64,000 nucleotides of DNA from IMG/VR virus record IMGVR_UViG_3300003322_000571, positions 1-64,000 of that record, one strand, 5' to 3'. Positions within the stretch are counted from its first letter, which is position 1. Every line of letters begins with the position of its first letter. Position numbers and translations under genes: made by a program. Below the pieces are notes generated by a model. It ran no database searches. It worked only from the letters and a program-made list of their open reading frames with translations, and was not told the origin of the DNA. This document shows, one piece after another, positions 2,539 to 64,000 of this stretch.

Positions 2539-2916
2539 ATGATTGTTGAACAAATCTTCCTGTTCCTGACGCTGATTACGATTAAGCACTTCATTGCTGA
2601 CTTCCTCTATCAGCCACCGTATCAGTGGATGAACAAAGGTACGTACGGTCACTGGGGTGGAATTGTCCACTCAGGACAACACGCTGTACTGACTGCGATC
2701 ATTCTTGCATTCTTCGTAGATAGTCCTGTTGACATTGGCTTGATTGCACTTCTTGAGTTTGTCATCCACTATCATACTGACTGGGCGAAGATGAACCTGA
2801 ACAAGAAGATGGGATGGGGTGCTACGACGCACAACGAGTTTTGGATCTTGCTTGGTGTTGACCAATTGATTCATTCGTTGACTTATCTTCTGATCGGGTA
2901 TATCGTATTCATGTAA
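2539..2916 (+). CDS. DUF3307-type membrane protein
   Basis: HFIADFLYQ, HYHTD, GVDQLIH motifs. Confidence 0.8.
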   Translation: MIVEQIFLFLTLITIKHFIADFLYQPPYQWMNKGTYGHWGGIVHSGQHAVLTAIILAFFVDSPVDIGLIALLEFVIHYHTDWAKMNLNKKMGWGATTHNEFWILLGVDQLIHSLTYLLIGYIVFM

Positions 2917-26893: not shown

Positions 26894-29800
26894 ATGTCAC
26901 AAACAATCAAGATCAAGCGTTCCTCTGACCCAGGTAAGGTTCCTGCTTCATCGGAACTCGAACTTGGCGAATTGGCCATTAACACTTATGACGGTAAAAT
27001 CTTCTTCAAGAGGGATGATGGCACTGAAAGTATCGTCAACGTAACTGGCGAAACAGGCAATACTGGTCAACCAGCTGGTTCCTTGTACAACATTCAGATG
27101 AATGGTGGTGGTAATTCCTTCGCTGCTATTCCTAACGGCACTGACGGTTATATCCTGACGGCTCATGGCAATGCTACTCCAACATGGGAACCAGCACCTG
27201 CCACGGGCGTTACATCGGTTGCTGTTTCCGGTGGTACAACAGGTCTGACAACATCTGGTGGTCCAATTACTGGCGCTGGTACAATCACACTTGGTGGCAC
27301 ACTTGCTATTGCTAACGGTGGTACAGGTGCTACAACGGCAGGTGCTGCTCTGACAGCATTGTTGCCTTCACAAACGGGTAACAACGGTCGTGTCCTCTCC
27401 ACGGACGGCACAACGGCTTCTTGGATTGCTCCTCCTGCAGCAGGCGTGACATCTGTGCAGGCTTCGGGCGGTACGACCGGCATGACATTCTCAGGCGGTC
27501 CAATCACGTCGTCAGGTACATTGACGATGGCTGGTACTTTGGCAATCGCTAATGGTGGTACAGGTGCAACGACAGCTGCTAACGCCATCAATGCTCTCGT
27601 CCCTTCACAGACAGGTAACAGTGGTCGTTATTTGACGACAAACGGTACAGTTGTTTCGTGGTCGGCAGCTGCTCCTGGTACAGTTACATCGGTTCAAGGT
27701 TCAGGTGGCACAACAGGTCTGACGTTCTCCGGCGGTCCAATTACTACTACCGGTACGTTGACACTTGGTGGCACGTTGGCTGTTGCTAACGGTGGTACTG
27801 GTTCGACAACGCAATCGGGTGCTATTAACAATCTGTTGCCAGCACAATCTGGTCAAGGTGGTAAGGTTCTTACGACTGATGGTTCTGCTGTATCATGGAC
27901 GACTGCATCTGCTGGAACGGTCACGTCTGTTGCTATTGATCCAAGCACAACGGGTCTGACTTTTGCTGGTGGCCCAATTACTTCGTCTGGTACATTCACA
28001 GTTGGTGGTACGCTTGCTGTTGCTAACGGCGGTACAGGTGCTACAACTGCCAACAGTGCTTTGAATGCCCTCTTGCCTTCGCAGACGGGTAACTCTGGCC
28101 GCGTGTTGTCTACAAACGGTACTGACGCTTCTTGGATTGCTGCAGCTACGGGTACAGTTACATCGGTCGCTGTTTCCGGTGGTACAACTGGTTTGACGAC
28201 TTCCGGTGGTCCAGTCACAACTTCCGGTACAATCACTCTTGCAGGTACTCTTGCCTTGGCAAACGGTGGTACAGGTGCAACGACACAAGCTGGCGCTGCT
28301 AACGCTGTATTGCCATCACAGACGGGTAACTCCGGTCGCTACTTGACAACAAACGGCACGAACGTTTCTTGGTCAGCTGCTGCACCAGGCACTGTTACGT
28401 CTGTTCAGGCATCTGGCGGTACGACGGGATTGACATTTAGCGGTGGTCCAGTTACGACATCTGGTACGTTGACGCTGTCGGGTACATTGGCACTCGCTAA
28501 TGGTGGTACAGGTGCTACAACGCAAGCTGGTGCAGCTAACGCTGTTCTGCCATCTCAATCGACTTTCGCTGGTCAATTCTTGACGACTGACGGCACGAAC
28601 GTGTCGTGGGCAATGCCTTCGGCATCTGCCACATCGTTGAATGGTATCGGTACGACACCACGTAGTGCTACAACGGCTGGTGTATATGCTGGTATTGATG
28701 GCGGTTCCGATCCGATCGTTACATTGTCTAACCCTGCTGCAGGTGTTGACGGCGGCGTGTTCCAGATGTATGTTATCGATAACGGTTCGTTGAACCTCGG
28801 TTTCTCGAACGATGCATACAACCAAACGAACTTCTTGACGGTTACGCGTCCTGCAGCAAGCAGCACTGCATCGAACATCACGTTCGCAGCAACTGCAATG
28901 CAGATCAACGCTCCTGTAACTGCAACGTCGTTCTCTGGTGTTGGCACGAACTTGACAGCGTTGAACGCTTCGAACGTCAGCTCCGGTACGCTCGCTATCG
29001 CCAACGGCGGTACAGGTCAGACGACGGCATCTGGTGCAATCAACGCTCTGGTTCCATCGCAAACGGGTAACTCTGGTCGTGTTCTCGGTACGAACGGTAC
29101 AGCAGTATCTTGGGTTGCTGCATCGGCAGGTACGGTAACTTCGGTTGCAGCATCTGGCGGTACAACTGGTTTGACGTTCAGCGGTTCGCCAATCACAACG
29201 TCGGGTACTTTGACATTGTCGGGTACTTTGGCTTTGGCAAATGGTGGTACAGGTGCTACAACGCAGGCGGGTGCAGCTAACGCTGTATTGCCATCGCAGA
29301 CAAGCGCTGCTGGTCAGTTCTTGACAACGAACGGTACAAACGTATCGTGGGCAACTGTTTCTGCTACAACGTTGGGCGCGACAGGTATTTCGCCACGCGC
29401 TGCTAGCGGTTCGACGTCTGGTATCTACGCTGGTATTGACACGGCTCCTAACAACGACCCAACGTTCACGATGGTGAGCGGTGATGCTACAACTGGTAAC
29501 AAGGTTTCTCAGTTGTATATCGTTGACAGCGGTCAAATCAACTGGGGCTTCTGCGCTGATAACTTCAGCGGTCAAACAAACTTCTTGACGGTTGGCCGTT
29601 CGTCGGGTACGAACAACGCAAGCACGATCACGTTGACAAGCACAGCGTTCCAAGTTAACGCTGCGTTGACAGCAACGTCGTTGGCTGGTTCTGGTACAGG
29701 TATCACGGCACTGAGTGCTTCGAACATCTCTACTGGTGTTATCCAGGATCCATTGCGATTGGCAACGACGGGTACACCAAGCTCGTCGACGTATCTGCGT

Positions 29801-30358
29801 GGTGACTTGTCTTGGCAGCCAATTTCGTCTGCTGGTACTGTTACTTCGGTACAGGTTGCTGGTGGTACGACTGGTTTGACGTTCTCAGGTGGTCCTATCA
29901 CTACGAGCGGTACGATCACGATGGCTGGTACGCTTGCTATCGCCAACGGCGGTACAGGTCAGACGACAGCTTCTGGTGCAATTAACGCATTGGTTCCGTC
30001 TCAGACTGGTAACGCTGGTTTGTACTTGACAACGAACGGTACTTCTGTCTCTTGGGCTGCTGCATCTGCTACTGCTTCTAATATCCCACGTGTAACAACG
30101 TTCGATATTAACGCTCGTGGTGCTCGTGTTGCATTGACAGCTGACGTCACGGTTAACAGTGGCGTGTTTGCAGTTGGTGATGTTATCAGCTTCTACAACA
30201 CAACAGCTTCTACGCTCCAGTTGATCCAAGGTTCAGGTATGACGGGACGTTTGGATGGTACAGCTAACACAGGTACACGTACAATTCAGCCTTTCGGTGT
30301 GTGCTACATCTGGTTCAACACAACAACGGAATACATCGTTTCCGGTAGCGTTTTGTAA
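26894..30358 (+). CDS. long tail fibre with ~80-aa tandem repeats
   Basis: IKIKRSS...GELAINTYDGK; repeated GTVTSV..SGGTTGLT.SGGPITTSGT...ANGGTG...LPSQTGN. Confidence 0.85.
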   Translation: MSQTIKIKRSSDPGKVPASSELELGELAINTYDGKIFFKRDDGTESIVNVTGETGNTGQPAGSLYNIQMNGGGNSFAAIPNGTDGYILTAHGNATPTWEPAPATGVTSVAVSGGTTGLTTSGGPITGAGTITLGGTLAIANGGTGATTAGAALTALLPSQTGNNGRVLSTDGTTASWIAPPAAGVTSVQASGGTTGMTFSGGPITSSGTLTMAGTLAIANGGTGATTAANAINALVPSQTGNSGRYLTTNGTVVSWSAAAPGTVTSVQGSGGTTGLTFSGGPITTTGTLTLGGTLAVANGGTGSTTQSGAINNLLPAQSGQGGKVLTTDGSAVSWTTASAGTVTSVAIDPSTTGLTFAGGPITSSGTFTVGGTLAVANGGTGATTANSALNALLPSQTGNSGRVLSTNGTDASWIAAATGTVTSVAVSGGTTGLTTSGGPVTTSGTITLAGTLALANGGTGATTQAGAANAVLPSQTGNSGRYLTTNGTNVSWSAAAPGTVTSVQASGGTTGLTFSGGPVTTSGTLTLSGTLALANGGTGATTQAGAANAVLPSQSTFAGQFLTTDGTNVSWAMPSASATSLNGIGTTPRSATTAGVYAGIDGGSDPIVTLSNPAAGVDGGVFQMYVIDNGSLNLGFSNDAYNQTNFLTVTRPAASSTASNITFAATAMQINAPVTATSFSGVGTNLTALNASNVSSGTLAIANGGTGQTTASGAINALVPSQTGNSGRVLGTNGTAVSWVAASAGTVTSVAASGGTTGLTFSGSPITTSGTLTLSGTLALANGGTGATTQAGAANAVLPSQTSAAGQFLTTNGTNVSWATVSATTLGATGISPRAASGSTSGIYAGIDTAPNNDPTFTMVSGDATTGNKVSQLYIVDSGQINWGFCADNFSGQTNFLTVGRSSGTNNASTITLTSTAFQVNAALTATSLAGSGTGITALSASNISTGVIQDPLRLATTGTPSSSTYLRGDLSWQPISSAGTVTSVQVAGGTTGLTFSGGPITTSGTITMAGTLAIANGGTGQTTASGAINALVPSQTGNAGLYLTTNGTSVSWAAASATASNIPRVTTFDINARGARVALTADVTVNSGVFAVGDVISFYNTTASTLQLIQGSGMTGRLDGTANTGTRTIQPFGVCYIWFNTTTEYIVSGSVL

Positions 30359-35290: not shown

Positions 35291-35369
35291 TTGCGGCTGC
35301 GTAGCAACACGGTTACTTCTTTGACTCTTAATCAAAACCATAACACCGTTAGCGATTTTATCTCCGCAA
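35291..35369 (+). ncRNA. Y RNA-like RNA 5: minimal, displaying a tRNA-Lys(CTT) anticodon arm
   Basis: GCGGCTGCGTAG...GGTTACTTC-[TTTGA-CTCTTAA-TCAAA]...TTTATCTCCGC. Confidence 0.72.
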
Positions 35370-51452: not shown

Positions 51453-54173
51453 GTGAATTTTAACCACGACACTGGCTTAGTCGATAGCCTTCTTACAATC
51501 GACACAACAGTTGCGCCACCACTTGGTGGTTTGACGAACACTCTTGCTATCACAGGCACAGGTTCGCTGGTTCTTCCTCATGGTTCAACAGCTGAGCGTC
51601 CGGGTACGCCTGTTGAGGCTATGATTCGCTACAACAACAGCACACAGGATCTTGAATTCTACGACGGCACAAGTTGGGTTGAAGTTTCTTCTTCCGTAGG
51701 TACTGTGACATCTGTGACTGTGACAACATCAACAGGTATGACAGTATCTGGTGGTGTTACACAAACAGTTACTGACAACGGAACGTTCGCTCTTGTATTG
51801 TCACCAGAACTGCAAGGATTGTCGGCACTTGCTGTAACTGGTATTGTTACACGTACAGCAGCTGGTACATATGTATCACGCACGATCGCTGGTACAGCTG
51901 GTGATATCGTTGTTGCGAACGGTGATGGCGTATCTGGGAATCCAACATTGTCGCTTGCTACAGTCGGTACTCCTGTATCGAATGGCTTCCTTAAAATCAC
52001 TACAGATACGAAGGGTCGTGTAACAGGTACAACAGCAGTTACAACTGCGGATGTTACGACACTTGTTGATGGAACATACGTCAACATTTCTGGTGATACA
52101 ATGGCGTCAGGTGCAAACTTGACGTTTACGGGCGGTGGTGAAATTCTAGGTTTGCCTGCGATGCCGTCAGATCCAACATCTGCCGCTTCAAAGGCGTACG
52201 TTGATGCTACTGCTCAAGGTTTGGCGACTAAAGATTCCGTCCGTGTTGCTACAACAGGCCCGGGTACACTTTCTTCGTCGTTTGCAAACGGTCAAACAGT
52301 TGACGGTATTGTTCTTGTAACAGGCGACCGTATCCTGATCAAAAACCAGACGAGCCAAGCCGAAAACGGTATCTATGTTGTACAAGCAGCAGGTACGCCT
52401 GTCCGTGCTGTCGACATGGACATTTGGGCGGAAGTTCCTGGCGCTTACTGCTTTGTAAGCGGAGGTACATTAAATCACGATACTGGTTGGGTGTGTACAT
52501 CTCAACCTGGCGGTACAATCAACGTTAACCCAATCACGTTCACGCAGTTCTTTGGTGCTGGTGCTTACACAGCTGGCGTTGGTTTGACGCTGAACGGTAC
52601 TGAATTCTCGTTAACGTCTCCTGTTGCAACAACGCTTGGTGGTACTGGTTTGACGACTGTAGGTGGTGCTAACACTGTTCTTGGTGTCAATGCTGCTGGT
52701 ACAGCTTATCAAGCTAAGACTATTGCTGCTGGTACGGGTGTTTCTGTAACGCACAGCACAGGTACGATTACGCTCGCTAACACAGGTGTTACTTCCGTCG
52801 CTGGTACAGCTGGTCGTGTTACGGTTTCTGGTTCGACAGGTGATGTTACAATCAGCTTGCCTAACGATGTTTCCGTCGCTTCTGTTACTGCTACAGGTTT
52901 GACACCGAACGGTGCTTTGTTTGCAAGTGCTGGTGGTCTCGTAAGCTCAACAACAGCAATGACGAACGGTCAGTTGTTGATCGGTAATACAGGCACAACA
53001 CCATCAGTTGCTACACTTGCCACAGGTACGGGTATTTCTGTAACAAACGGTGCTGGTACAATCACGCTTGCTAACACGGGCGTTACATCCCTGACTGCTG
53101 GTACAGGTATCAGCTTGTCTGGTGCAACAGGTGCGATCACTGTTACGAACACAGGTGTGACATCAGTTAACGCTTCAGGCGGTACAACAGGTTTGTCGTT
53201 CAGTGGTGGTCCAGTTACAACGACAGGTACGTTGACGCTCGGTGGTACTCTTGCTCCATCGAACGGTGGTACGGGGTTGACAGCACTTGGTGTTGCTAAC
53301 TCTGTTCTAGGTGTCAACGCTGCTGCGTCGTCAGCAGAATACAAGACTGTTGAAGCTGGCACAGGTATTTCCGTAACACACAGCGCAGGTCAAATTACAG
53401 TTGCTAACACAGGTGTAACATCGGTTGGTCTTGCTGCGCCAAGCATCTTTACGGTTGCCGGCACGCCTGTTACAACAACAGGTACGTTGACACTCAGTCT
53501 TGCAACACAAACTGCAAATACAGTATTTGCAGGTCCTACTTCAGGCGGTTCTGCAGCACCAACGTTCCGTTCGCTGGTATACAACGACTTGCCAATCGCA
53601 TTGTACAAGGAAAATCCATCGACGCCTACAGCGCCTGTAGCTTCTGGTACAAACGCAATTGCTATTGGTAGCGGCTCGTCAGCTACTGCACAAGGTGGTT
53701 TGGCTCTCGGTATTGGTTCTGCAGCTCGTGTATACGGTCAAGTTGCTGTTGCTAACGGTCAATTCACTTCTGTCGGTGATGCACAACAAGGTACATACAT
53801 CTTCCGCAACATCACCACTAACGCAACGCAAACGGAATTGTTCCTTGATGGTGTCACAGGTACACAGCGTCTTGTAATGCCTAACAACAGTGCAATGACG
53901 TTCTCGATCCTGGTAACAGGTCGTCGTACCGATGCTGTAGGTGGTGGCGCTGGTTACCGTATCGACGGCGTTGCTCGTAAGGATGCAACAGCTGCTTCTG
54001 CAACAATCATTGGTGCTGTTGTTAAGTCGGTCCTTGGTGAAACAAATGCGGCATGGGATGTAACGGTTGACGCTGACACAACAAACGGTTCGCTCCGTGT
54101 TCGTGTAACAGGTGAAGCTGCTAAAACAATTCGTTGGGTTGCTGTTGCAACGACTGCGGAAGTAACAAACTAA
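51453..54173 (+). CDS. tail fibre protein
   Basis: GSTAERP..MIRYN, SVRVATT, GDRILIKNQT..ENGIY, NTGVTS repeats. Confidence 0.85.
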   Translation: MNFNHDTGLVDSLLTIDTTVAPPLGGLTNTLAITGTGSLVLPHGSTAERPGTPVEAMIRYNNSTQDLEFYDGTSWVEVSSSVGTVTSVTVTTSTGMTVSGGVTQTVTDNGTFALVLSPELQGLSALAVTGIVTRTAAGTYVSRTIAGTAGDIVVANGDGVSGNPTLSLATVGTPVSNGFLKITTDTKGRVTGTTAVTTADVTTLVDGTYVNISGDTMASGANLTFTGGGEILGLPAMPSDPTSAASKAYVDATAQGLATKDSVRVATTGPGTLSSSFANGQTVDGIVLVTGDRILIKNQTSQAENGIYVVQAAGTPVRAVDMDIWAEVPGAYCFVSGGTLNHDTGWVCTSQPGGTINVNPITFTQFFGAGAYTAGVGLTLNGTEFSLTSPVATTLGGTGLTTVGGANTVLGVNAAGTAYQAKTIAAGTGVSVTHSTGTITLANTGVTSVAGTAGRVTVSGSTGDVTISLPNDVSVASVTATGLTPNGALFASAGGLVSSTTAMTNGQLLIGNTGTTPSVATLATGTGISVTNGAGTITLANTGVTSLTAGTGISLSGATGAITVTNTGVTSVNASGGTTGLSFSGGPVTTTGTLTLGGTLAPSNGGTGLTALGVANSVLGVNAAASSAEYKTVEAGTGISVTHSAGQITVANTGVTSVGLAAPSIFTVAGTPVTTTGTLTLSLATQTANTVFAGPTSGGSAAPTFRSLVYNDLPIALYKENPSTPTAPVASGTNAIAIGSGSSATAQGGLALGIGSAARVYGQVAVANGQFTSVGDAQQGTYIFRNITTNATQTELFLDGVTGTQRLVMPNNSAMTFSILVTGRRTDAVGGGAGYRIDGVARKDATAASATIIGAVVKSVLGETNAAWDVTVDADTTNGSLRVRVTGEAAKTIRWVAVATTAEVTN

Positions 54174-54189
54174 AACTATAAGGTGATAT

Positions 54190-56289
54190 ATGGAGTTTGA
54201 CTACAGCTTAGAGACGATTAGTCCTACGCTAACTCCTACTCTCACGATTGGTGGTACAGGCAGTCTGACGATTCCAGTAGGAACGTCAGCTGCTGAACCA
54301 ACTGGTGTGACGGGTACGATGCGATACGATACGGATCTCAACAAGTTCCGTTTCTACACAACTAGTTGGAATAACATTGCGACAGAAGGATACGTTGCGT
54401 CAAACTTCCAACCACTTGATTCCGACTTGACAGCACTGGCTAATACGTCAACAACAGGATTGTATGTTGTGACAGGTGCTGGTACATCTACCACCCGAAC
54501 ACTGACAGCACCTGCAGCTGGTATTACCGTTTCAAACGGTAACGGTGTTGCGGGTAACCCCACTCTGTCTCTTGCTAATGACTTGAGTGCTCTTGAAGCT
54601 CTCGCAAGTACAGGATATGCGGTACGTACAGCAACTGATACATGGGCACAACGTTCAATCGTTGCCGGTTCCTCTAAGTTGTCCGTAACAAATGGTGACG
54701 GCGTTGCGGGTAATACATCTGTCGACGTAGTTGAAGCAAACCTGACGTTAAACAACATTGGCGGTACTCTTAGCATTGCCAAAGGCGGCACGGGATTGAC
54801 TGGTGCAGGTACAGCAAACCAGATGTTTGGCATGAATGCTGCAGCAACAGCTCCCGAATACAAAACGCTTGTTGCTGGTACAGGGTTGTCTATTCTTCAT
54901 GCACCTGGACAAATTACATTTGCAAATACTGGTGTAACATCAGTCGCTGCAACAGTTCCCGCTGCAGGTATTACTGTTAGCGGAAGTCCGATCACAACAA
55001 CTGGTACACTTGCATTCAATCTTGCCAACGATCTCGCTGCTTTGGAAGGTCTTGCAAGCACGGGATTTGCAACTCGTACTGCAACTGATATCTGGGCGCA
55101 ACGTACTCTGACATCTGGCTCTTCCAAGTTGTCGTTGACGAATGGTGACGGTGTTGCTGGCAATCCTACATTCGATGTTGTTGAAGGAAACTTGACACTA
55201 AACAATATCGGCGGGACGCTTGGTATTGCTAAAGGCGGTACAAACTTGACGACACTTGGAACAGCGAACCAAGTACTTGGTGTCAATGCAGCTGCTACAT
55301 CACTTGAATACAAATCGCTTGTTGCGGGTACGGGCATTAGTATTGGACAAGGTGCTGGTGCGGTGACGATCAACAACACAGGTGTAACGTCAGTAGCAGC
55401 TTCTGCACCAAGCGCTGGTTTTACGATTACGGGTAGTCCGATCACAACGACAGGTACGTTGACGTTTACATTGGCAAATGACTTGGCAGCTGTTGAAGGA
55501 TTGGCAGGAACAGGATATGCGGTACGTACTGCAGCTGATACATGGGCTCAACGTTCGTTTGCAGCTGCCTCTTCCAAAGTTGCTATCACGAATGGCGATG
55601 GCGTTTCGGGAAACACTACGGTTGATGTAGTTGAAGCGAACCTATCATTGAACAACATTGGCGGCACGCTCAGTGTTGCAAAGGGCGGTACAAACCTGAC
55701 AGCGGTTGGATCTGCAAATCAGGTGATGGGTGTTAATGCTGCTGGTACAGCTCTTGAATACAAAACGATTGCAGCTGGTACAGGTATTACTGTAGCACAC
55801 ACAGCAAATACGGTAACGATCACAAACAACTCGAAGTCGATTGCGCAGTTGATTCCAAGTGCAATTACAGCAGCAACTGGCTCAACAACAATCCCCGTAG
55901 ACAACACTCCTCCGTTGAATACGGAAGGTACGCAAGTGTGGTCAGGTACTATTACACCAACAGCAACAACTTCGACGGTACGAATTGAAGTTTGTACTAA
56001 CGTAGGTGTTGACGCAAACCAAGCATTTGTTACAGTTGCATTGTTCCGTGGTACGACTTGTATTGCTGTTAAATCTGCCGCGGCTATTGGTGCTGGACTA
56101 GCGTCAGCTGTTCAACAAGCTGCTTCGTTGAACCTGTGTTTCTATGATACCCCTGCTACTACATCAGCTGTGACATACTCTGTACGTGTGGGTTCTAGTA
56201 CAGGCAACTGGTATTTTGGACGAAGTGCTGTTGCTACATATAACGGATTAGCATCAGGACAAGTAGTATTAACAGAGTTCCGCGCATAA
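54190..56289 (+). CDS. tail fibre protein with three ~150-aa repeats
   Basis: Three copies of LANDL.A.E.LA.TG.A.RTA.D.WAQR. Confidence 0.85.
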   Translation: MEFDYSLETISPTLTPTLTIGGTGSLTIPVGTSAAEPTGVTGTMRYDTDLNKFRFYTTSWNNIATEGYVASNFQPLDSDLTALANTSTTGLYVVTGAGTSTTRTLTAPAAGITVSNGNGVAGNPTLSLANDLSALEALASTGYAVRTATDTWAQRSIVAGSSKLSVTNGDGVAGNTSVDVVEANLTLNNIGGTLSIAKGGTGLTGAGTANQMFGMNAAATAPEYKTLVAGTGLSILHAPGQITFANTGVTSVAATVPAAGITVSGSPITTTGTLAFNLANDLAALEGLASTGFATRTATDIWAQRTLTSGSSKLSLTNGDGVAGNPTFDVVEGNLTLNNIGGTLGIAKGGTNLTTLGTANQVLGVNAAATSLEYKSLVAGTGISIGQGAGAVTINNTGVTSVAASAPSAGFTITGSPITTTGTLTFTLANDLAAVEGLAGTGYAVRTAADTWAQRSFAAASSKVAITNGDGVSGNTTVDVVEANLSLNNIGGTLSVAKGGTNLTAVGSANQVMGVNAAGTALEYKTIAAGTGITVAHTANTVTITNNSKSIAQLIPSAITAATGSTTIPVDNTPPLNTEGTQVWSGTITPTATTSTVRIEVCTNVGVDANQAFVTVALFRGTTCIAVKSAAAIGAGLASAVQQAASLNLCFYDTPATTSAVTYSVRVGSSTGNWYFGRSAVATYNGLASGQVVLTEFRA

Positions 56290-57962: not shown

Positions 57963-58275
57963 GTTCTGGGGCATTACATGCTTCGTGTTTGTCGCTCTGT
58001 TTACTTTCAGAGCGTACAAACTTGAACCAGGCAAAGGACAATCACCGCGTAGCTCGATCATTGAAGCTTGGGTCAACATCGTCATTGGTTTCACTATCAG
58101 TTACGGTGCGAACTTCCTAATTTTCCCTCTAATTGGCTCGCATCTAACCGCTGGACAGAACTTTTGGATTGGCTGGATTTACACAGCAATTTCAATTGTT
58201 CGTCAGTATACAATTAGGCGTTGGTTCAACGACCACGTCCACAATATGGCACTGCGCTTGGCAGGAGACAAATGA
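57949..58275 (+). CDS. membrane protein
   Basis: QSPRSSIIEAWVN...SIVRQYTIRRWFN. Confidence 0.7.
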   Translation: MWSLEFWGITCFVFVALFTFRAYKLEPGKGQSPRSSIIEAWVNIVIGFTISYGANFLIFPLIGSHLTAGQNFWIGWIYTAISIVRQYTIRRWFNDHVHNMALRLAGDK

Positions 58276-58823
58276 TTTACTTGTTTTTAGATACGGAGTT
58301 CACCTCGTTTGAACAACCAGAGCTGATCTCCATTGGCATCGTTTCGGAAGACGGTCAACATGAATTCTACCGTGAAGTGTCCGACCACAATGCGTATAAA
58401 CGTAGCCAGTTCGTCAAGGACGTCGTCATCCCGTTGTTGTTCAACGACTACGCAACAAGCATGATTCGTGAGTACGTTGCTATGGATCTCAACAAGTGGA
58501 TCGATAGCCTCCCAACCGATCAAGTGACAATTGTTGTTGATTATCCTGGTGACTGGCATCTCGTTAAGCCATTGCTTGATAAGGTGTCTGAGCGACGCGT
58601 TAAGATCAATGCTGAGATGCGTAATCACTCGTTCCTTGCTGCTGCACGGTACCGAGCTGTTGATGTCTCGCCTGAAAAGACATTGGAAGCAATGTTCGTG
58701 ATGGAGGAGTCTGAAGAGGCTTACTTCAAGACAGATCCTCGTCAACATCACGCTTTGGTCGATGCACGAGCAATGCGTGCTGGATGGATTGCAGCTTTGG
58801 AGGTTCTCAATGGACAGCAATAA
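58272..58823 (+). CDS. DEDDh 3'-5' exonuclease
   Basis: FLDTEF, LISIGIV, HHALVDA. Confidence 0.88.
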   Translation: MIYLFLDTEFTSFEQPELISIGIVSEDGQHEFYREVSDHNAYKRSQFVKDVVIPLLFNDYATSMIREYVAMDLNKWIDSLPTDQVTIVVDYPGDWHLVKPLLDKVSERRVKINAEMRNHSFLAAARYRAVDVSPEKTLEAMFVMEESEEAYFKTDPRQHHALVDARAMRAGWIAALEVLNGQQ

Positions 58824-59766
58824 ACTACTAGGAGGCTTTTATGGCCTCGTTCTTGGTGATGCTGTTGGTGTTCCGTTTGAATTTCAACAGCCGCGCCAAC
58901 TACCGCCGCTGTCAAAAATCGACATTGTGATGGCTGATGTTCCCAAGTTCACCAAAACATATCCGCAAGTCCCGTACGGTACCTGGTCCGATGACACAGC
59001 ATTGTCATTGTGTCTTCTTGATGCGTTGCTTGATTTTACCGAGCCGGAGATGTGGCACGGCGACTTTGTCGAGAATATGCAAAATTGGCGATTCCATGGC
59101 AAATTTACTCCGTATAACGAGAAGAAATTTGACATTGGGTTGCAGACTGCCATGGCATTGACTGAACTGGAAGACGGATTGAGTATTCAGGCGCGTGTGG
59201 ACGGCCCAGATCGTTGTGGAAACGGTGCTTTGATGCGTAGCCTTCCAGTTGCCCTCGTGTATGCTTACGTACCAGACCACGACGTTCGTGCAAACTTAAT
59301 TGCCAATGTTACACTCGATCACGTCAATGCTACCCACGCGAACATGATGAGCAAGATTGTCAGTTTGGCGTATACGTTGCTGGCATCATATCTTCTCGAT
59401 GGAGTGTATTGGTTCGATGCCATTGATCTGGCGCTTGATAAGACCGAACAACTTCTTGGTGAAGCTTATAAGGATGACATGTTGAAGTTCCGAGCTTATG
59501 AGCATCGTGAACCAACAGGAACAGGCTACTCTGTTGATACATTCTGGTCTGCGATTTATGCATTGAAGGCTGGTTCAGACTTCCGTACAACGATTCAGCA
59601 TGCTATTTCACTTGGCAACGATACAGACACAACTGCATGCGTTGCTGGTGGACTCGCGGGGATTATCTACGGGTTTGATCGTCTTCCTGTTGATTGGCTT
59701 GCACATCTTCGCGATAAGCAACAAATTGATCAATATGCTCAGCGACTACTAATTATCTCACTATGA
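58810..59766 (+). CDS. ADP-ribosylglycohydrolase
   Basis: GDAVGVPFEF, WSDDT, GNGALMR, GNDTDT. Confidence 0.93.
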   Translation: MDSNKLLGGFYGLVLGDAVGVPFEFQQPRQLPPLSKIDIVMADVPKFTKTYPQVPYGTWSDDTALSLCLLDALLDFTEPEMWHGDFVENMQNWRFHGKFTPYNEKKFDIGLQTAMALTELEDGLSIQARVDGPDRCGNGALMRSLPVALVYAYVPDHDVRANLIANVTLDHVNATHANMMSKIVSLAYTLLASYLLDGVYWFDAIDLALDKTEQLLGEAYKDDMLKFRAYEHREPTGTGYSVDTFWSAIYALKAGSDFRTTIQHAISLGNDTDTTACVAGGLAGIIYGFDRLPVDWLAHLRDKQQIDQYAQRLLIISL

Positions 59767-59957
59767 AAGACAAAATAGGTCAGAAACTAGCTGTACATGA
59801 CCGCGTAGCGACGACGTTGTATGGTGCTTTGTGCGTTGGAGTTATTACAAAGTTGACAAAGGCGTATGTCTACGTACTAGCCCTTGACGAGACGGCGATG
59901 TTAGCGACCTTTAAGACGACTTCCAGCAACGTGATTAAGATTGGAAACACAGAATGA
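59763..59957 (+). CDS. hypothetical protein
   Basis: Coupled ORF. Confidence 0.55.
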   Translation: MKDKIGQKLAVHDRVATTLYGALCVGVITKLTKAYVYVLALDETAMLATFKTTSSNVIKIGNTE

Positions 59958-60382
59958 TTCTAAAAGAAAAGACACTAATGAGGGTAGATGCCCCTAATCG
60001 TAATATGCGTCAATATCCACGCGAGGTCGTTGAAGCTGCTCTTGCAACGAAAACGACGATGTACGGATTGCTAGGCGAACCGGCAATTGTTGGTGATGAC
60101 GAGGGAACGTTTAAAATTGATGTCCCAACTGCCGAGAACGCTGCTTTTGTTGCTTCCAACTTCAAGTTTGATGGTGACTACGTTGTCTGCGATGTTGAAA
60201 CACTTGATACTCATACAGGACGAATTTTCGAGCAATTGACAACTTTGCCTAAAGGTTGTGGATTCTATCCAGTTCTGACCGTCGGTGGCTATATTGGATC
60301 AACGATGAGTGATGGTGTTCAATTAGTCACGGAGTGGGATTTTATCGTTCCGTACGCAACTGTTATTCCTATGTGGGATTAA
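59954..60382 (+). CDS. degenerate prohead protease (T4 gp21-like) paralog
   Basis: PNRNMRQYPREV, LLGE, LDT.TGR; catalytic His not evident. Confidence 0.55.
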   Translation: MILKEKTLMRVDAPNRNMRQYPREVVEAALATKTTMYGLLGEPAIVGDDEGTFKIDVPTAENAAFVASNFKFDGDYVVCDVETLDTHTGRIFEQLTTLPKGCGFYPVLTVGGYIGSTMSDGVQLVTEWDFIVPYATVIPMWD

Positions 60383-60449: not shown

Positions 60450-61172
60450 ATGTACATCATCTACAAACACACTTGTACTGCCACTGGTAAAAGTTATGTT
60501 GGACAAACCAAAGAACTAACTAAGCGTACAAACGCACACAAGAGTTCAAGGTCGGGGTGCGTTGCGTTCAGGAACGCCATTAGCTGCTACGGGTGGGAGT
60601 CATTTGTCACGGTTGAGTTGGCTTGTTGCACGACGGTTGGAGACGCCAACGTTGTAGAGAGCTTGTTGATATCCGAATACAACACCATAGCACCCAGTGG
60701 ATATAACTTAACAAGTGGTGGCAAAGCATGTCAGATCAGCGAATTGACCAAGCGGAAAATTTCTGAGTCACTGAAAGGTAGGCCGAAGCCTCCCCGGACA
60801 TCATCTCACATAGAAAATCTGGCTGCACGGCGTCGAGGAAAGTCGTATGAGGAGTTATACGGCGTTGAACGAGCCAAAGAGTTAAAGAAAAACAAAGGGC
60901 ACGCGTTTGATGAGTACCATTCACAGCGACGAGGAAAAGGGTTTAACGACTTGTTTGGTGAAGACAAAGCCGCAGAGATACGCGCAAAGATGTCGAGGAC
61001 TAGGTTGACCAAAATTCCCGAATCAACCCAAGTGTTGATAGAAACAACATACGATCGTGACAAGTGTGTGACAAAAACGTTTGCGGAATCAATCGGGTTG
61101 ACAGTATACATTGTAGTTAGATATTTGAAGGACATCGGTAAATGGAATCCAAAGCAGCTCCCAAGCAGGTAA
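60450..61172 (+). CDS. GIY-YIG homing endonuclease
   Basis: IIY..T...GKSYVGQT, GYNLTSGG, NUMOD3-like repeat. Confidence 0.9.
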   Translation: MYIIYKHTCTATGKSYVGQTKELTKRTNAHKSSRSGCVAFRNAISCYGWESFVTVELACCTTVGDANVVESLLISEYNTIAPSGYNLTSGGKACQISELTKRKISESLKGRPKPPRTSSHIENLAARRRGKSYEELYGVERAKELKKNKGHAFDEYHSQRRGKGFNDLFGEDKAAEIRAKMSRTRLTKIPESTQVLIETTYDRDKCVTKTFAESIGLTVYIVVRYLKDIGKWNPKQLPSR

Positions 61173-61558
61173 TCGTAATGAGACGCGATCTGAAGATGCC
61201 GCGAGGAAAGATTGCGGCACAGGCAGCACATGCTTCAATGGCAGGCCTTCTCAACCATGTTACCTTCCGTCTTGAGGAAGACACGATGGAGGGATGGGCG
61301 TTGTCGATGCCGAAGAATGGTGCGATGTCACAGTGGTTGCGTGGCGCTTTCACCAAGGTTTGCGTTTGCGTTGAGAGTGAAGCTGAACTTGAGGCTGTGT
61401 ACAAGCAAGCTCAATTGGCTGGCCTCAACGTGTCAAAGATTGTCGATAACGGTTTGACTGTATTCGACAACGTTCCCACTTGGACGTGCATCGGTGTGGG
61501 GCCGGACTTCCCTGAGCGAATTGATCCAATCACTGGCCATTTGAAACTATACAATTGA
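61142..61558 (+). CDS. pth2: peptidyl-tRNA hydrolase Pth2
   Basis: KQVIVMRRDLKM..GKIAAQAAHA, IVDNGLT, IGVGP, ITGHLKLY. Confidence 0.93.
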   Translation: MESKAAPKQVIVMRRDLKMPRGKIAAQAAHASMAGLLNHVTFRLEEDTMEGWALSMPKNGAMSQWLRGAFTKVCVCVESEAELEAVYKQAQLAGLNVSKIVDNGLTVFDNVPTWTCIGVGPDFPERIDPITGHLKLYN

Positions 61559-62183
61559 CATAATACCAGTCTGTAACAGTTGGACTGTTGAGTTTAGCCA
61601 TTATTGACGAACGATGCATGTTGAGCGTACGAATAGCATCTCCTATTGAGTTGTACTTAACGCCAGCACATACCACTGGTTTTAATCGAGCTTGATTAGA
61701 AGAACGAAGTTTCACCTTTTGCTCTTCTGTCATTGGCACTCCTTTGTTGGATGCTGTTCTTCCGGTAAGCTTTTCGCGTTGTTCCAATGTCCATGGCTTT
61801 CCTTTGTTGGGCGCAGGTCGTCCCTTCAAAGATTCGGAGATCATCCGCTTGGAAAGTTCCGTGTGTGTTTTTCCGATGAATGTGCCGGATGTATTTCCGT
61901 TAGGATTTCCCTTTCCACCAACAGTTATATTCAAGCATAGTGGATCTCGTAACAACTCAGTGGTAACCAGTTCACTCTCAATCACCAACGCTTCTGCGCG
62001 TGTAGAGCAGATGCGAAGAACTTCACGCTTGAACAGCGATCGTCCGTATTTCCTGACGCTAGCTCTGATACGATTACCCGAACCTAAATAGTCATCTGTG
62101 CTCGCATTCTCCCCTGAATGTACGCCAATGTAAAATTGGTTTGTGTCAATGTTGACGGTCTTGTAAACAATGTGCTCTCTCAT
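61530..62183 (-). CDS. GIY-YIG (Seg-like) homing endonuclease
   Basis: IVYKTVN...FYIGVH, YLGSG, NUMOD3/NUMOD1 repeats. Confidence 0.9.
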   Translation of the reverse strand: MREHIVYKTVNIDTNQFYIGVHSGENASTDDYLGSGNRIRASVRKYGRSLFKREVLRICSTRAEALVIESELVTTELLRDPLCLNITVGGKGNPNGNTSGTFIGKTHTELSKRMISESLKGRPAPNKGKPWTLEQREKLTGRTASNKGVPMTEEQKVKLRSSNQARLKPVVCAGVKYNSIGDAIRTLNMHRSSIMAKLNSPTVTDWYYVNCIVSNGQ

Positions 62184-62206
62184 GATACCCCTCCAACGCT
62201 TATTTA

Positions 62207-62284
62207 TGGACTTGCATTGCGATTGGTCCAGACTTCCCTGAGAAGATCGATCCGATCACTCGTCAACTCAAGTTGTACAACTAA
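62207..62284 (+). pseudogene. orphaned original C-terminus of Pth2
   Basis: WTCIAIGPDFPEKIDPITRQLKLYN* versus WTCIGVGPDFPERIDPITGHLKLYN*. Confidence 0.9.
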
Positions 62285-62292
62285 GTACACCT

Positions 62293-62390
62293 GCCAGCGT
62301 TTCTAATATTGGCCTTAGGGGTGCCCTTATAAAGCACTAAGACCCGTCTAGATCAGGCGGTTAATGTGGGTTCGATTCCCATCGCTGGTA
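62293..62390 (+). tRNA. tRNA-Ile(TAT)-like with a long variable arm
   Basis: GCCAGCG/CGCTGGT; loop CT-TAT-AA; extra arm of about 28 nt. Confidence 0.7.
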
Positions 62391-62446
62391 CACACAACCC
62401 TAATATTTCTGTTGGGGTAACGTACTCAACCATATATACTTTCTTC

Positions 62447-62513
62447 AGCTGTTGCGTAGTTCAAGGGTTACTTCTTTTGGTGAAACTATCCCCTTGACGT
62501 TTTAATCTCAGCT
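62447..62513 (+). ncRNA. Y RNA-like RNA 6: minimal
   Basis: AGCTGTTGCGTAG-TTCAAGGG-TTACTTC...CCCTTGAC-GTT-TTAATCTCAGCT; TATACT -10 box just upstream. Confidence 0.75.
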
Positions 62514-62526
62514 TTAACATATGTAC

Positions 62527-62588
62527 GCACGTGGGTGCAAGGTTAACTGTTCCCGTCTCATGACCGGACGTTAGTCTCCACGCTGCCA
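62527..62588 (+). ncRNA. CCA-ended hairpin displaying a Met(CAT)-like anticodon loop
   Basis: Paired ends GCA-CGTGG/CCACG-C-TGC-CA; apical loop CTCATGA. Confidence 0.4.
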
Positions 62589-62600
62589 ACTTTTGGTTGA

Positions 62601-62635
62601 AGCCCTGGTATGCAACACTGCTACCAGGGCTTTTC
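62601..62635 (+). terminator. intrinsic terminator
   Basis: AGCCCTGGTA...TACCAGGGCTTTT. Confidence 0.7.
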
Positions 62636-62652
62636 CTTTTTGGAGAAAATAA

Positions 62653-63057
62653 ATGTCGCTAGGTACAATTAAAGATGTCGTAATTGCTACGGTGGATGTC
62701 GCTAATCTCAACAATCGCGTTTACCCAAAGAACGTGATTGAAGAAGCTGTTCGTCAGCGTGTTCATCCGATTTTCGGCCGAGTCGGTATGCCGGAAGCAG
62801 GATCGTCTTGTGAGGTCGACCTTCGTGATGTATCACATCAAGTTACCGATCTCCGAATCACCGAAGATGGTAACTTGACTGGCACAGTTGTCGTCCTTGA
62901 CACGCCTCCCGGTAGGTTGCTGACATCATTGTTGACAGAGAACCTCGACATCACCTTCCGCATGGCAGGATATGGTGATCTAATTGATAAGGATGGATAC
63001 ACAGAAGTGACCAACTTTCGTCTATCATCGATCAATGCTGTCGCAGACGGTGCTTGA
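62653..63057 (+). CDS. degenerate prohead protease (gp21-like) paralog
   Basis: NLNNRVYP, VSHQVT, VLDTPPGR. Confidence 0.65.
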   Translation: MSLGTIKDVVIATVDVANLNNRVYPKNVIEEAVRQRVHPIFGRVGMPEAGSSCEVDLRDVSHQVTDLRITEDGNLTGTVVVLDTPPGRLLTSLLTENLDITFRMAGYGDLIDKDGYTEVTNFRLSSINAVADGA

Positions 63058-63075
63058 TCTCATTAAGGGTCAACC

Positions 63076-63375
63076 ATGAAACTCCTCGAAGAACTTGAAG
63101 CACAGTTTACTGATGGTCGTCAACTGTCTTCTGAACTGTTTGGTTACATCTTGCGTTGGTATCAAACAGGTGAGATCGACAAAGTTGATGAGCTGCTGAA
63201 GTCGATCGAGTTCAAGCCCACGATGCTGCATGTTGCTGCTGGCGTGATCCGTATCACAGCAGGCTGGCGACACCTTCTTCCGTCTTGGGAAGAAGCAAAG
63301 GATCGGGCGGTGTTGGCGATCACGGAAAGTGGTCATGATCCTCACAAGCTGTTAATGGGAGTTCGTCCGTTATGA
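63076..63375 (+). CDS. hypothetical protein
   Basis: ORF. Confidence 0.6.
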   Translation: MKLLEELEAQFTDGRQLSSELFGYILRWYQTGEIDKVDELLKSIEFKPTMLHVAAGVIRITAGWRHLLPSWEEAKDRAVLAITESGHDPHKLLMGVRPL

Positions 63376-63560
63376 AACGTGACATCAAAGATCATCCGTT
63401 ATTGAAAACGATGACGGCTGAGCAACTGTTGCAAATGCTCGTTGATGTTCGAGAAGTTGCATGGGTCGAAGGCCAAGATGGACGAACGAAAGAAGATTTT
63501 TACAACGCTTTAACGCAAATTTGTCGCATCACACGTGATGTTGACAACTACCATTTTTAA
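63372..63560 (+). CDS. hypothetical protein
   Basis: Coupled ORF. Confidence 0.55.
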   Translation: MKRDIKDHPLLKTMTAEQLLQMLVDVREVAWVEGQDGRTKEDFYNALTQICRITRDVDNYHF

Positions 63561-63573
63561 CTGGAGAAACGAT

Positions 63574-64000
63574 ATGTCAAAACTCAATCCAACTGGTCGT
63601 AACGTTACGACAAACATTGTTGCGGTTGCTGCGAACCGTGGTGAACAGCTTGCTGTTTCTGCGAATGGCAACTTGCAATTCAAGAAGGACTCCTACCAGA
63701 CGTTGTACGAAACAACTGTTTCGACGATGCTTGGCAAGGGCAACCAACTGAATTCTGCTGATGCGCTTGTGCAAAAGCTGAAGGCGTCCGTTCGTTCTGT
63801 TGTTGCTGATGGCGCCAGCTCATTCGACTTCATTGCGAACCTCGCAATCCACGCACGTACGGAGATGAACGTCCGTACGATCCCAATCGTTCTTGTGGTT
63901 GAATTTGCGAAGGCGCTCGCCGATCAGCGTCAACCGTTGGTTGCACGTGTTGATGCGATTGAACAAGAACTGACTACAGCTCGTAAGGCTAAGCGTGCGA
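63574..64000 (+). CDS. Ro60/Rsr-like TROVE-domain protein (N-terminal part; runs off the window)
   Basis: GGAG RBS; open to the window end; DFIANLAIHARTEMNVRTIPIVLVVE resembles the TROVE F.A.LA.YAR..M.LR..P helix. Confidence 0.72.
   Translation, partial: MSKLNPTGRNVTTNIVAVAANRGEQLAVSANGNLQFKKDSYQTLYETTVSTMLGKGNQLNSADALVQKLKASVRSVVADGASSFDFIANLAIHARTEMNVRTIPIVLVVEFAKALADQRQPLVARVDAIEQELTTARKAKRA

What the first reader, a model, noticed from the sequence alone, without database searches (positions are those of the whole stretch)
62447..62588. Small promoter-terminator unit near the TROVE gene: a minimal Y RNA plus a CCA-ended anticodon hairpin
Seen: TATACT (62435-62440) precedes Y-like copy 6, whose cargo TTC-TTTTGGT-GAA resembles a Gln(TTG) anticodon loop. 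Next comes a 62-nt rod with an apical CTCATGA (Met-like) loop and a 3' CCA, then a terminator (62601-62635). Inference: a dedicated small-RNA transcript made of anticodon mimics.
Basis: partly seen in the sequence, partly recalled or inferred. Interest (0 to 1): 0.6.

Follow-up and report, generated by a model that had tools for sequence, protein, structure and literature searches.

The report
Phage Y RNA beside its Ro gene
A 350-kb uncultured jumbo phage carries, about 1 kb upstream of its Ro60 (TROVE) gene, a small promoter-to-terminator unit whose first hairpin is a conserved, minimal Y RNA, while the second hairpin, read as a Met-anticodon/CCA mimic, is an unconserved filler.

Summary
The first element (62446-62514) is real. 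It recurs upstream of the TROVE gene in every close relative I fetched, and both helices covary. A covariance model built from it hits 96 sites in 33 of 43 phage TROVE loci, all on the TROVE strand. It hits only 3 sites in 845 kb of control phage DNA, and one of those also lies next to a TROVE gene.

It has the Y RNA layout: a terminal stem, then an internal loop carrying UUGCGUAG, a variant of the bacterial GNCGAA(N)G Ro-binding motif, then a second helix and a small U-rich apical hairpin. It lacks the tRNA-like module that four or five paralogs in the same genome carry. It is best read as a YrlB/Yrn2-type minimal Y RNA with its own sigma-70-like promoter and an intrinsic terminator.

The anticodon reading fails:
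- The apical stem has 3 bp.
- The loop length and the supposed anticodon vary between orthologs.

The 62-nt rod also fails:
- It has no homolog.
- It folds no better than shuffles (z = -1.08).
- Its CCA is partly paired.
- Relatives carry a second Y RNA or unrelated hairpins in that slot.

No RNA-seq data exist. This is a new member of a known kind.

The parts
62412..62440 (+). Sigma-70-like promoter: -35-like TTGGGG (62412-62417), 17-nt spacer, -10 TATACT (62435-62440) inside the conserved word CATATATACT. The predicted start is about 62447, the first base of the Y RNA stem.
   Evidence: Read from the sequence. The same TTGnnn / 16-18 nt / TATA(C/A)T arrangement lies 7-9 nt before the RNA in L003, L004, L005, L007, L172, L175, L194 and L195, and less clearly in L198. 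ATATATACT occurs only 4 times on the + strand of the 350-kb genome. The consensus scanner did not flag it. No transcript data.
62446..62514 (+). Minimal Y RNA-like sRNA (family copy 6). Terminal stem AGCUG/CAGCU; internal loop 5' UUGCGUAG opposite 3' CGUUUUAAUCUC; helix 2 UCAAGGG/CCCUUGA; junction UUAC / ACUAU; apical mini-hairpin UUC-UUUUGGU-GAA.
   Evidence: R1 81.8 bits, R2 68.9 bits. Orthologs lie upstream of TROVE in 11 relatives. Covariation: 91% of cells paired against 60% in shuffles, and 153 double-change cells against 47.
62515..62526 (+). Spacer between the Y RNA and the second hairpin.
   Evidence: Unpaired in the fold; not conserved.
62527..62588 (+). 'Rod': a phage-specific 62-nt imperfect hairpin in the variable second slot of the unit. 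Apical UCAU/CUCAUGA; the 3' GCCA is partly paired.
   Evidence: Fold -21.1 kcal/mol, z = -1.08. R2 gives 2.3 bits. No homolog in related loci. No significant similarity to Y copies. Relatives hold a second Y-like RNA or unrelated hairpins in this slot.
62599..62640 (+). Intrinsic terminator: a 12 + 3 bp GC-rich hairpin followed by UUUUCCUUUUU. It is immediately followed by the ribosome-binding site and ATG of the next gene (ATG 62653).
   Evidence: -24 kcal/mol, z = -5.9. Hairpins with different stem sequences plus a U-tract lie at the same place in L003, L005, L007, L172, L175, L195 and L198.
63574..64000 (+). 5' part of the TROVE + vWA (Ro60/Rsr-like) gene, the presumed protein partner. The whole gene is genome 63574-65250, 558 aa.
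   Evidence: Pfam TROVE 7e-21 and VWA_2. The closest solved structure is Thermus phage phiLo phiRo60 (9KOP/9L5Y, E = 3.7e-14). More than 2,000 homologs.

Best explanation
The unit is a small non-coding RNA gene of a jumbo phage. A host-type promoter starts transcription at about 62447, and an intrinsic terminator ends most transcripts at about 62640. The first 69 nt fold into a minimal Y RNA. A 5-bp terminal stem and the adjacent asymmetric internal loop (5' UUGCGUAG, 3' CGNUUUUAUCUC) form the module that docks on the phage's own Ro60 (TROVE + vWA) ring, whose gene lies 1.06 kb downstream on the same strand. Where paralogs carry a tRNA-like T-arm/acceptor/D-arm module, this copy has only a small U-rich hairpin (UUC-UUUUGGU-GAA). 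It is therefore the 'long hairpin with small pyrimidine-rich loop' type of Y RNA (YrlB/Yrn2-like), which would gate or tether Ro60 rather than mimic a tRNA. The 62-nt rod occupies a fast-evolving second slot that in relatives holds a second Y RNA or other hairpins. Here it is most likely a lineage-specific structural or 3'-protective hairpin, or a decayed second Y RNA, with no anticodon or CCA function. Shown: conservation, covariation, tight same-strand association with TROVE, and motif resemblance. Inferred: transcription boundaries, Ro60 binding, and any downstream function.
For: Orthologous elements with the same promoter word and a terminator lie between PTH2 and TROVE in L003, L004, L005, L007, L172-L175, L194, L195 and L198. 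Both helices covary. Model R2 gives 96 hits at E <= 0.01 in 33 of 43 IMG/VR TROVE loci, all on the TROVE strand and mostly within about 600 nt upstream, often in tandem. It gives 3 hits in 845 kb of control phage DNA that had been pre-selected for two conserved words. One of those (L044) proved to lie just upstream of a TROVE ORF. R2 also finds 6 tandem copies upstream of TROVE in Caulobacter phage CcrPW and one in Gordonia phage Trax. The paralog at 1180-1318 carries T-arm, stem and D-arm in YrlA order (Rfam YrlA positions 30-81, 20 bits, below threshold). Copies at 930, 1180, 1645 and 349904 have GGUUCGAWUCC T-loops. The 5' loop word is GCGUAG in 14 of 39 members and GCGAAG in 5 of 39. The published Ro-binding motif is GNCGAA(N0-1)G, and a YUAY word follows the stem; here that word is UUAC in 30 of 39 (PMC4201824). 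The layout 'terminal stem, internal bulge with CGAA, stem' was shown to bind a phage Ro60 in PMC12135203. [quoted passage not shown]
Against: No Rfam Y RNA family reaches threshold anywhere in the genome. The motif here (UGCGUAG) departs from GNCGAAG at two positions. No expression data exist: the only run holding the sequence is DNA from a root metagenome. Binding to Ro60 is untested. The covariation counts were made on a model-fitted alignment, which leans towards the structure. The -35 element is weak, and the promoter scanner missed it.
Confidence: 0.72

Rival explanations
1. One reading: the transcript is made of anticodon mimics. These would be a Gln(UUG)-like loop in the Y RNA and a Met(CAU)-like, CCA-ended hairpin that engages MetRS, VapC-type nucleases or other tRNA-recognising proteins.
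For: The loop UUUUGGU fits the Y-U-NNN-R-N pattern, and it recurs exactly in 5 of 17 orthologs and near relatives. CUCAUGA fits the tRNA-Met loop pattern, and CCA follows the rod. The phage carries more than 30 tRNAs and tRNA-like Y RNA modules. CCA addition to a Y RNA is known in M. smegmatis (PMC4201824).
Against: The apical stem has 3 bp, not 5. The loop length ranges from 3 to 11 nt, and the 'anticodon' triplet changes among orthologs while a UUGG word slides within the loop. The rod has no homolog. Its loop folds as a UCAU tetraloop, the first C of its CCA is paired, and no relative has CCA or a CAU loop at that place. The rod's stability is ordinary (z = -1.08).
Confidence: 0.05
2. The rod is a second, strongly diverged Y RNA (a Y2), as in relatives where two Y-like RNAs stand in tandem between promoter and terminator. 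Alternatively it is a misfolded-RNA-like ligand for the Ro60 cavity.
For: Slot 2 holds a clear second Y-like RNA in L007, L194, L195 and L198. By eye there are patches of likeness: CAAGGUUAACUGUUC against CAAGGGUUACUUCUU, and GACGUUAGUCUC-CACG against GACGUUUUAAUCUC-AGC. UCUC precedes the 3' strand of the closing stem. The small loop is pyrimidine-rich, as in YrlB/Yrn2-type RNAs.
Against: R2 scores it at 2.3 bits. Local alignment to six Y copies gives z <= 1.5 against shuffles. It lacks the CG(A/U)AG loop word in unpaired form.
Confidence: 0.15
3. The whole unit is mainly a cis-acting leader or attenuator of the downstream operon (62653 onward, including TROVE), not a trans-acting RNA.
For: The terminator's U-tract runs straight into the ribosome-binding site of the next gene, here and in relatives. 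In L172 and L175 the next gene is TROVE itself. No convincing promoter lies between 62640 and 63574. In M. smegmatis, YrlA and YrlB are encoded upstream of Rsr and are processed from a single precursor.
Against: Family members lie far from TROVE inside tRNA arrays of the same genome (499-1752, 35291, 349904), so the fold is not tied to a cis role. The terminator is very strong. Co-transcription and a trans role are not exclusive.
Confidence: 0.2
4. A structured phage sRNA or processing signal with no relation to Ro60, for example a tRNA-array punctuation element that happens to lie near TROVE.
For: Several copies lie inside tRNA clusters directly after tRNA 3' ends. There is no Rfam Y RNA hit.
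Against: The hit density in TROVE loci is about 100-fold that of the controls. All 96 hits are on the TROVE strand. A TROVE-blind pattern search also led to a TROVE gene. The motif and the module order resemble YrlA.
Confidence: 0.06

Closest known systems
YrlB / Yrn2-type bacterial Y RNAs (S. Typhimurium YrlB, M. smegmatis YrlB, D. radiodurans Yrn2; PMC4201824)
   Same: A small RNA encoded next to the Ro60 gene on the same strand. The 5' and 3' ends pair. A CGAA-like word lies near the 5' end. [quoted passage not shown] It coexists with tRNA-like Y RNAs in the same genome.
   Different: There is no detectable sequence homology to those RNAs. The motif is UGCGUAG rather than GNCGAAG. This RNA has its own promoter and terminator instead of the operon-internal position of the Salmonella RNAs. 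A conserved GUUACUUC...UGGUGAAA apical word is specific to this phage family.
YrlA (Rfam RF02553), tRNA-like Y RNA of bacteria and phages
   Same: The same stem and internal-loop module. A YUAY word (UUAC) follows the 5' stem strand. Paralogs in this genome carry T-arm, stem and D-arm in YrlA order.
   Different: This copy has no T-arm, D-arm or acceptor-like stem. The Rfam model gives no hit here at E <= 10 and none above 20 bits in the whole genome, against a threshold of 69 bits.
Yrl1/Yrl2 of Thermus phage phiLo with phiRo60 (PMC12135203; PDB 9KOP, 9L5Y)
   Same: Phage-encoded. Located upstream of the phage Ro60 gene. Stem-bulge-stem layout with the binding word in the bulge. phiRo60 is the closest solved relative of this TROVE protein.
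   Different: The proteins are only distantly related (E = 3.7e-14 over 360 residues). phiLo uses CGAA. Binding has been demonstrated there and not here.
Metazoan Y RNAs (Rfam RF00019)
   Same: In this one sequence, 5' GU(U)CAA / 3' UUGAC can be drawn like the bulged GGUCCGA/UUGACU Ro-binding helix.
   Different: That helix is not conserved in orthologs (GAAGUGUG, CUAGUGUG and others), so the likeness is a coincidence. The conserved module is the internal loop next to the terminal stem.

Membership tests
Bacterial/phage Y RNA (Ro60-associated ncRNA; criteria of Chen et al. 2014) | Encoded within about 4 kb of the Ro60/TROVE gene, on the same strand | tested here: met
   62446-62514 (+) against the TROVE start at 63574 (+), 1.06 kb apart. 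Family-wide, 96 of 96 hits are on the TROVE strand.
Bacterial/phage Y RNA (Ro60-associated ncRNA; criteria of Chen et al. 2014) | 5' and 3' ends pair into a stem that flanks the Ro-binding region | tested here: met
   Terminal stem AGCUG/CAGCU. All 5 pairs show changes on both sides across 39 members, and 94% of cells are paired.
Bacterial/phage Y RNA (Ro60-associated ncRNA; criteria of Chen et al. 2014) | GNCGAA(N0-1)G word near the 5' end | tested here: inconclusive
   The window has UGCGUAG, which matches the motif except at two positions. Across the family: GCGUAG 14 of 39, GCGAAG 5 of 39, the rest variants. The position (internal loop after the terminal stem) fits.
Bacterial/phage Y RNA (Ro60-associated ncRNA; criteria of Chen et al. 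2014) | Physically bound by, or stabilised by, Ro60 | not testable with these tools
   No RNA-protein assay or fold is available, and no RNA-seq run holds the sequence.
YrlA (Rfam RF02553) | tRNA-like domain: T-arm, acceptor-like stem and D-arm between the stem strands | tested here: not met
   The insert is a 13-nt mini-hairpin with no T-loop or D-loop words. Paralogs at 930, 1180, 1645 and 349904 do have T-loops.
YrlA (Rfam RF02553) | Scores at or above the Rfam gathering threshold (69 bits) | tested here: not met
   No hit at E <= 10 over 62150-62700. The best hit in the genome is 20 bits, at 1225-1278.
   The Y RNA apical stem has 3 bp, the loop is 3-11 nt in orthologs, and the triplet is not conserved. 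The rod loop folds as a 4-nt UCAU loop and is not conserved.
CCA-ended tRNA-like minihelix | Single-stranded 3' NCCA at the mature end of a coaxial acceptor/T-like helix | tested here: not met
   The first C of the CCA pairs with G62527. There is no T-loop. The transcript would continue to the terminator 50 nt downstream. No relative has CCA at this place. The mature 3' end itself is not testable.

The most novel reading that the evidence does not exclude
The Y RNA stem module in these phages may be a standard 'handle' onto which exchangeable cargos are mounted: tRNA-like domains, U-rich mini-hairpins, or inserts of 100-250 nt. The promoter-Y1-slot2-terminator cassette next to TROVE would then be a rapidly exchanging two-slot display unit. 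Its minimal member, through its conserved UUGG(N)UGAAA loop, would recruit a specific phage or host partner to Ro60. Candidates are the conserved Rv2179c-like 3'-5' exoribonuclease or the RNA ligase encoded nearby, giving a phage-built RNA surveillance or repair particle distinct from the PNPase-based RYPER complex. On this reading the rod would be a new kind of cargo or Ro substrate.
Probability: 0.12. Interest if true: 0.7.

Novelty: new member of a known kind. Interest (0 to 1): 0.38.

Why it matters
Ro60 and Y RNA particles are known in animals, bacteria and a few phages, but the RNA partners are hard to find because they diverge quickly. Here a clade of uncultured jumbo phages of about 350 kb carries a Y RNA family that the Rfam YrlA model misses. 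The genome has up to seven copies, and one stripped-down copy is kept with its own promoter right beside the Ro60 gene. That gives:
- a usable covariance model for annotating Y RNAs in phage TROVE loci;
- a natural minimal Ro-binding RNA of 69 nt for biochemistry;
- a conserved RNA-metabolism neighbourhood (exoribonuclease, PTH2, tRNA-Ile(UAU), CYTH, RNA ligase) in which to look for the effector that the Y RNA tethers.

It does not reveal a new class of anticodon mimic.

Tried and rejected
- Rfam, by gathering threshold and by E <= 10, over the region and the whole genome: only a weak tRNA hit at 62293-62390 and chance miRNA/sRNA hits, with no Y_RNA or YrlA hit.
- Searching the genome for sequence repeats of the element with blastn-short and the repeat finder: nothing. 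The paralogs are recognisable only by structure and motifs.
- A metazoan-style GUYCRA...UUGAC helix scan: only chance matches. That helix is not conserved in orthologs.
- Megablast of the locus against cultured phages: no match.
- Peptide-pattern search for close TROVE relatives in IMG/VR: none. Relatives came from the word search and contig look-ups.
- A loose two-word DNA pattern in IMG/VR: it returned mostly chance matches in coding DNA. I reused these as a stringent negative control.
- Rod as a Y RNA paralog: R2 gives 2.3 bits, and alignment gives z <= 1.5.
- Rod homologs in related loci by blastn and nhmmer: none.
- Second-slot elements of relatives against R2 with filters off: none are family members.
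- Expression: the only run holding the sequence is a DNA root metagenome, probably the source sample.
- The simple promoter/terminator scanner missed both signals.
- NCBIfam on TROVE and the small neighbouring ORFs: no families.
- Complex prediction was not used, because it cannot take RNA.
- The supplementary tables of Chen et al. 2014 and two Wolin-lab reviews are not held. I could therefore not check whether the CcrColossus-type copies found by R2 are the ones already published.

Full report
**What the window is.** The window is the first 64 kb of a 350,089-bp IMG/VR virus record with direct terminal repeats. It is a jumbo phage with a T4-type major capsid protein (Gp23 family, genome 65814-67136) and at least 30 tRNA genes in the window. 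No cultured phage matches the locus at the DNA level. The nearest TROVE proteins of cultured phages are below 30% identical.

**Gene order around the finding.**
- Rv2179c-like 3'-5' exoribonuclease, 58221-58823.
- ADP-ribosylglycohydrolase, 58762-59766.
- A small Peptidase_S77-like ORF, 59954-60382.
- GIY-YIG endonuclease, 60450-61172.
- PTH2 peptidyl-tRNA hydrolase, 61142-61558.
- A second GIY-YIG/NUMOD3 endonuclease on the minus strand, 61530-62183.
- A duplicated PTH2 3' end, 62220-62284.
- A tRNA-like gene, 62293-62390.
- The finding, 62447-62588, followed by a terminator.
- Three small ORFs, 62653-63560.
- The TROVE + vWA (Ro60-like) gene, 63574-65250.
- Further downstream: Gp23, a CYTH protein, and an RNA ligase at 68642-69790.

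**The observation.** The 200 nt from 62441 fold into three hairpins with z = -3.96. Folded separately:
- The terminator is exceptional (-24 kcal/mol, z = -5.9).
- The Y-like hairpin is modest (z = -1.76).
- The rod is ordinary (z = -1.08, with 28 of 200 shuffles folding as well).

Thermodynamics alone therefore says little. The case rests on comparison with relatives.

**Conservation of the first element.** The TROVE protein has more than 2,000 homologs, many on contigs above 300 kb. I fetched loci for relatives at 52-73% protein identity.
- In all but the two most distant loci fetched (L008 at 61% and L009 at 52%, where the model found nothing), a near-identical layout lies between PTH2 and TROVE.
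- That layout is the word CATATATA(C/A)T, then 7-9 nt, then 5' GCUG-UUGCG..., a helix that differs in sequence, GUUACUUC-small loop-GAAA, the complementary helix strand...UUAUCUC-AGC 3'. A variable hairpin and a terminator whose stem differs in sequence follow.
- A five-sequence alignment already showed double changes in 7 of 13 pairs.
- A covariance model built from it (R1) found 45 sites in TROVE-adjacent phage loci, all on the TROVE strand.
- On the 39-member alignment, 91% of cells pair against 60% after shuffling and about 40% with slid partners. There are 153 double-change cells against 47. The caveat is that this alignment was fitted to the model.

**Association with TROVE.** The second model (R2) gave these results:
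- 96 hits at E <= 0.01 in 33 of 43 IMG/VR TROVE loci. Every hit is on the TROVE strand, usually within 600 nt upstream, and often in tandem arrays (seven each in L136 and L158).
- Only 3 hits in 845 kb of unrelated phage DNA that had been pre-selected for two of the family's conserved words.
- One of those three (L044) lies directly upstream of a TROVE-like ORF on the same strand. This is an independent confirmation.
- Six tandem copies upstream of the TROVE gene of Caulobacter phage CcrPW, and one upstream of the Ro-like gene of Gordonia phage Trax.

**Why it is a Y RNA.** Chen et al. 2014 (PMC4201824) define bacterial and phage Y RNAs by position (within 4 kb of Ro60, same strand), by a GNCGAA(N0-1)G word near the 5' end, by a YUAY word after the stem, and, for YrlA, by a T-arm/acceptor-like/D-arm module.
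- The family here has GCGUAG in 14 of 39 members, or GCGAAG in 5 of 39, in the internal loop after the terminal stem. It has UUAC in 30 of 39 after helix 2.
- Inside this genome R2 finds seven members: 349904-350021, 499-743, 930-1083, 1180-1318, 1645-1752 (weak), 35291-35369 and 62446-62514.
- Four of them carry a GGUUCGAWUCC T-loop.
- The copy at 1180-1318 aligns to positions 30-81 of Rfam YrlA (T-arm, stem, D-arm in the permuted YrlA order) at 20 bits, below threshold.
- The stem-bulge-stem layout with the binding word in the bulge is the one shown to bind a phage Ro60 in Thermus phage phiLo (PMC12135203). That protein is the closest solved relative of this TROVE protein.
- Copy 6 has no tRNA-like module. 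[quoted passage not shown]
- No Rfam Y RNA model reaches threshold. This is a divergent subfamily, and its membership is inferred, not demonstrated.

**The anticodon idea.** In 17 orthologs and near relatives the apical element is UAC-UUC-[loop]-GAA. The exact loop UUUUGGU occurs in five. The loop ranges from 3 to 11 nt, the stem has 3 bp, and the triplet at positions 34-36 of a notional 7-nt loop changes (UUG, UGG, GGA, UUU). What is kept is a UUGG(N)U word next to GAAA. This is a conserved loop motif, probably a protein or RNA contact, and not an anticodon mimic. The resemblance of GUUCAA/UUGAC to the metazoan Ro-binding helix is also specific to this one sequence.

**The rod.** What follows the Y RNA differs from genome to genome:
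- L007, L194, L195 and L198 have a clear second Y-like RNA.
- L003/L004 have a 49-nt hairpin, L005 a perfect 36-nt hairpin, and L172 a 17-nt hairpin plus spacer.
- L174 and L175 share a different element of about 100 nt.

None of the non-Y elements scores with R2. The window's rod scores 2.3 bits, has no blastn or nhmmer homolog in any related locus, and is not significantly similar to Y copies (z <= 1.5). Its apical CUCAUGA folds as a UCAU tetraloop. The first C of its CCA is paired, and the transcript would run on for 50 nt to the terminator. Positional analogy leaves a small chance that it is a decayed or remodelled second Y RNA.

**Transcription.**
- The -10 word is conserved, with a TTGnnn -35-like hexamer 16-18 nt upstream in all relatives.
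- ATATATACT occurs only four times on the + strand of the genome.
- The predicted start falls on the first base of the terminal stem.
- The terminator is strong and conserved in position, but its U-tract abuts the next gene's ribosome-binding site. In L172 and L175 that gene is TROVE itself. Partial read-through into the Ro60 operon is therefore plausible, as in M. smegmatis, where the Y RNAs lie upstream of Rsr and are cut from a single precursor.
- No RNA run holds the sequence. The only holder is a DNA root metagenome, probably the source. Boundaries and expression remain inferred.

**Verdict.** The first half of the finding is a genuine, conserved, minimal Y RNA-like gene with its own promoter and terminator beside the phage Ro60 gene. 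The second half (anticodon mimics, Met loop, CCA end) is not supported. This is a new member, of a divergent phage subfamily, of a known kind of system. Its interest lies in the family's modular arrays and in the conserved RNA-metabolism neighbourhood, not in a new mechanism.

Noticed in passing
window 62293-62390 (+): A tRNA gene that ARAGORN misses here and Rfam scores at only 32.4 bits. It forms a clean cloverleaf with a long variable arm of about 20 nt and the anticodon loop CUUAUAA (UAU, Ile), with a C31-A39 mismatch. Orthologs lie right after the PTH2 stop codon in L005, L172 and L175, and L173 carries a similar gene in a different gene context. ARAGORN calls the L172 and L173 copies tRNA-Ile(tat). 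A class-II-shaped tRNA-Ile(UAU) kept next to PTH2 and the Y RNA is unusual.
   Followed up: partly
window 499-743, 930-1083, 1180-1318, 1645-1752, 35291-35369; genome 349904-350021: Six further members of the same Y RNA-like family lie inside the tRNA arrays, several directly after a tRNA 3' end. Four have T-loop words, and one has T-arm, stem and D-arm in YrlA order. One has a 245-nt insert with no T-loop. None is annotated by Rfam.
   Followed up: partly
window 61142-62284: The PTH2 gene (61142-61558) overlaps at its 3' end a GIY-YIG/NUMOD3 homing endonuclease on the opposite strand (61530-62183). After it, at 62220-62284, lies a second in-frame copy of the last ~20 PTH2 codons (GPDFPEKIDPITRQLKLYN*) in the position where relatives end PTH2. 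It looks like an endonuclease insertion that brought its own replacement gene end. Another GIY-YIG gene lies just upstream (60450-61172).
   Followed up: partly
window 59954-60382 and 62653-63057: Two small paralogous ORFs (142 and 134 aa) with weak, sub-threshold similarity to the T4 prohead core protease family (Peptidase_S77) flank the PTH2/Y RNA region. The second starts right after the Y RNA terminator.
   Followed up: no
L174 2090-2190 and L175 2325-2430: Two relatives share a different conserved structured element of about 100 nt (GUACUGGUGGCAAAAGUGGAAGAUUAUUAGGG...) in the slot after the Y RNA. It is not a member of the Y family by model R2.
   Followed up: no
window 58221-59766 and genome 67697-69790; same order in L003, L004, L007, L172-L175: A conserved RNA-metabolism neighbourhood surrounds TROVE: Rv2179c-like 3'-5' exoribonuclease, ADP-ribosylglycohydrolase, PTH2, tRNA, Y RNA, TROVE, then the capsid gene Gp23, a CYTH protein and an Rnl-type RNA ligase. 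The exoribonuclease is a candidate for the effector that the Y RNA tethers.
   Followed up: partly
window 27198-30063 and 52637-55844: Long arrays of diverged 237-nt and 450-nt direct repeats (60-80% identity), rich in GGT/ACN codons. They are most likely repeated domains of fibre or surface proteins.
   Followed up: no
L191 (Caulobacter phage CcrPW) 1571-2761: Six tandem family members with different cargos fill the 1.2-kb 'empty' stretch upstream of the annotated RNA-binding (TROVE) gene. One small ORF annotated as a hypothetical protein (2608-2736, minus strand) overlaps two of them (2463-2610 and 2638-2761) and is probably spurious.
   Followed up: no
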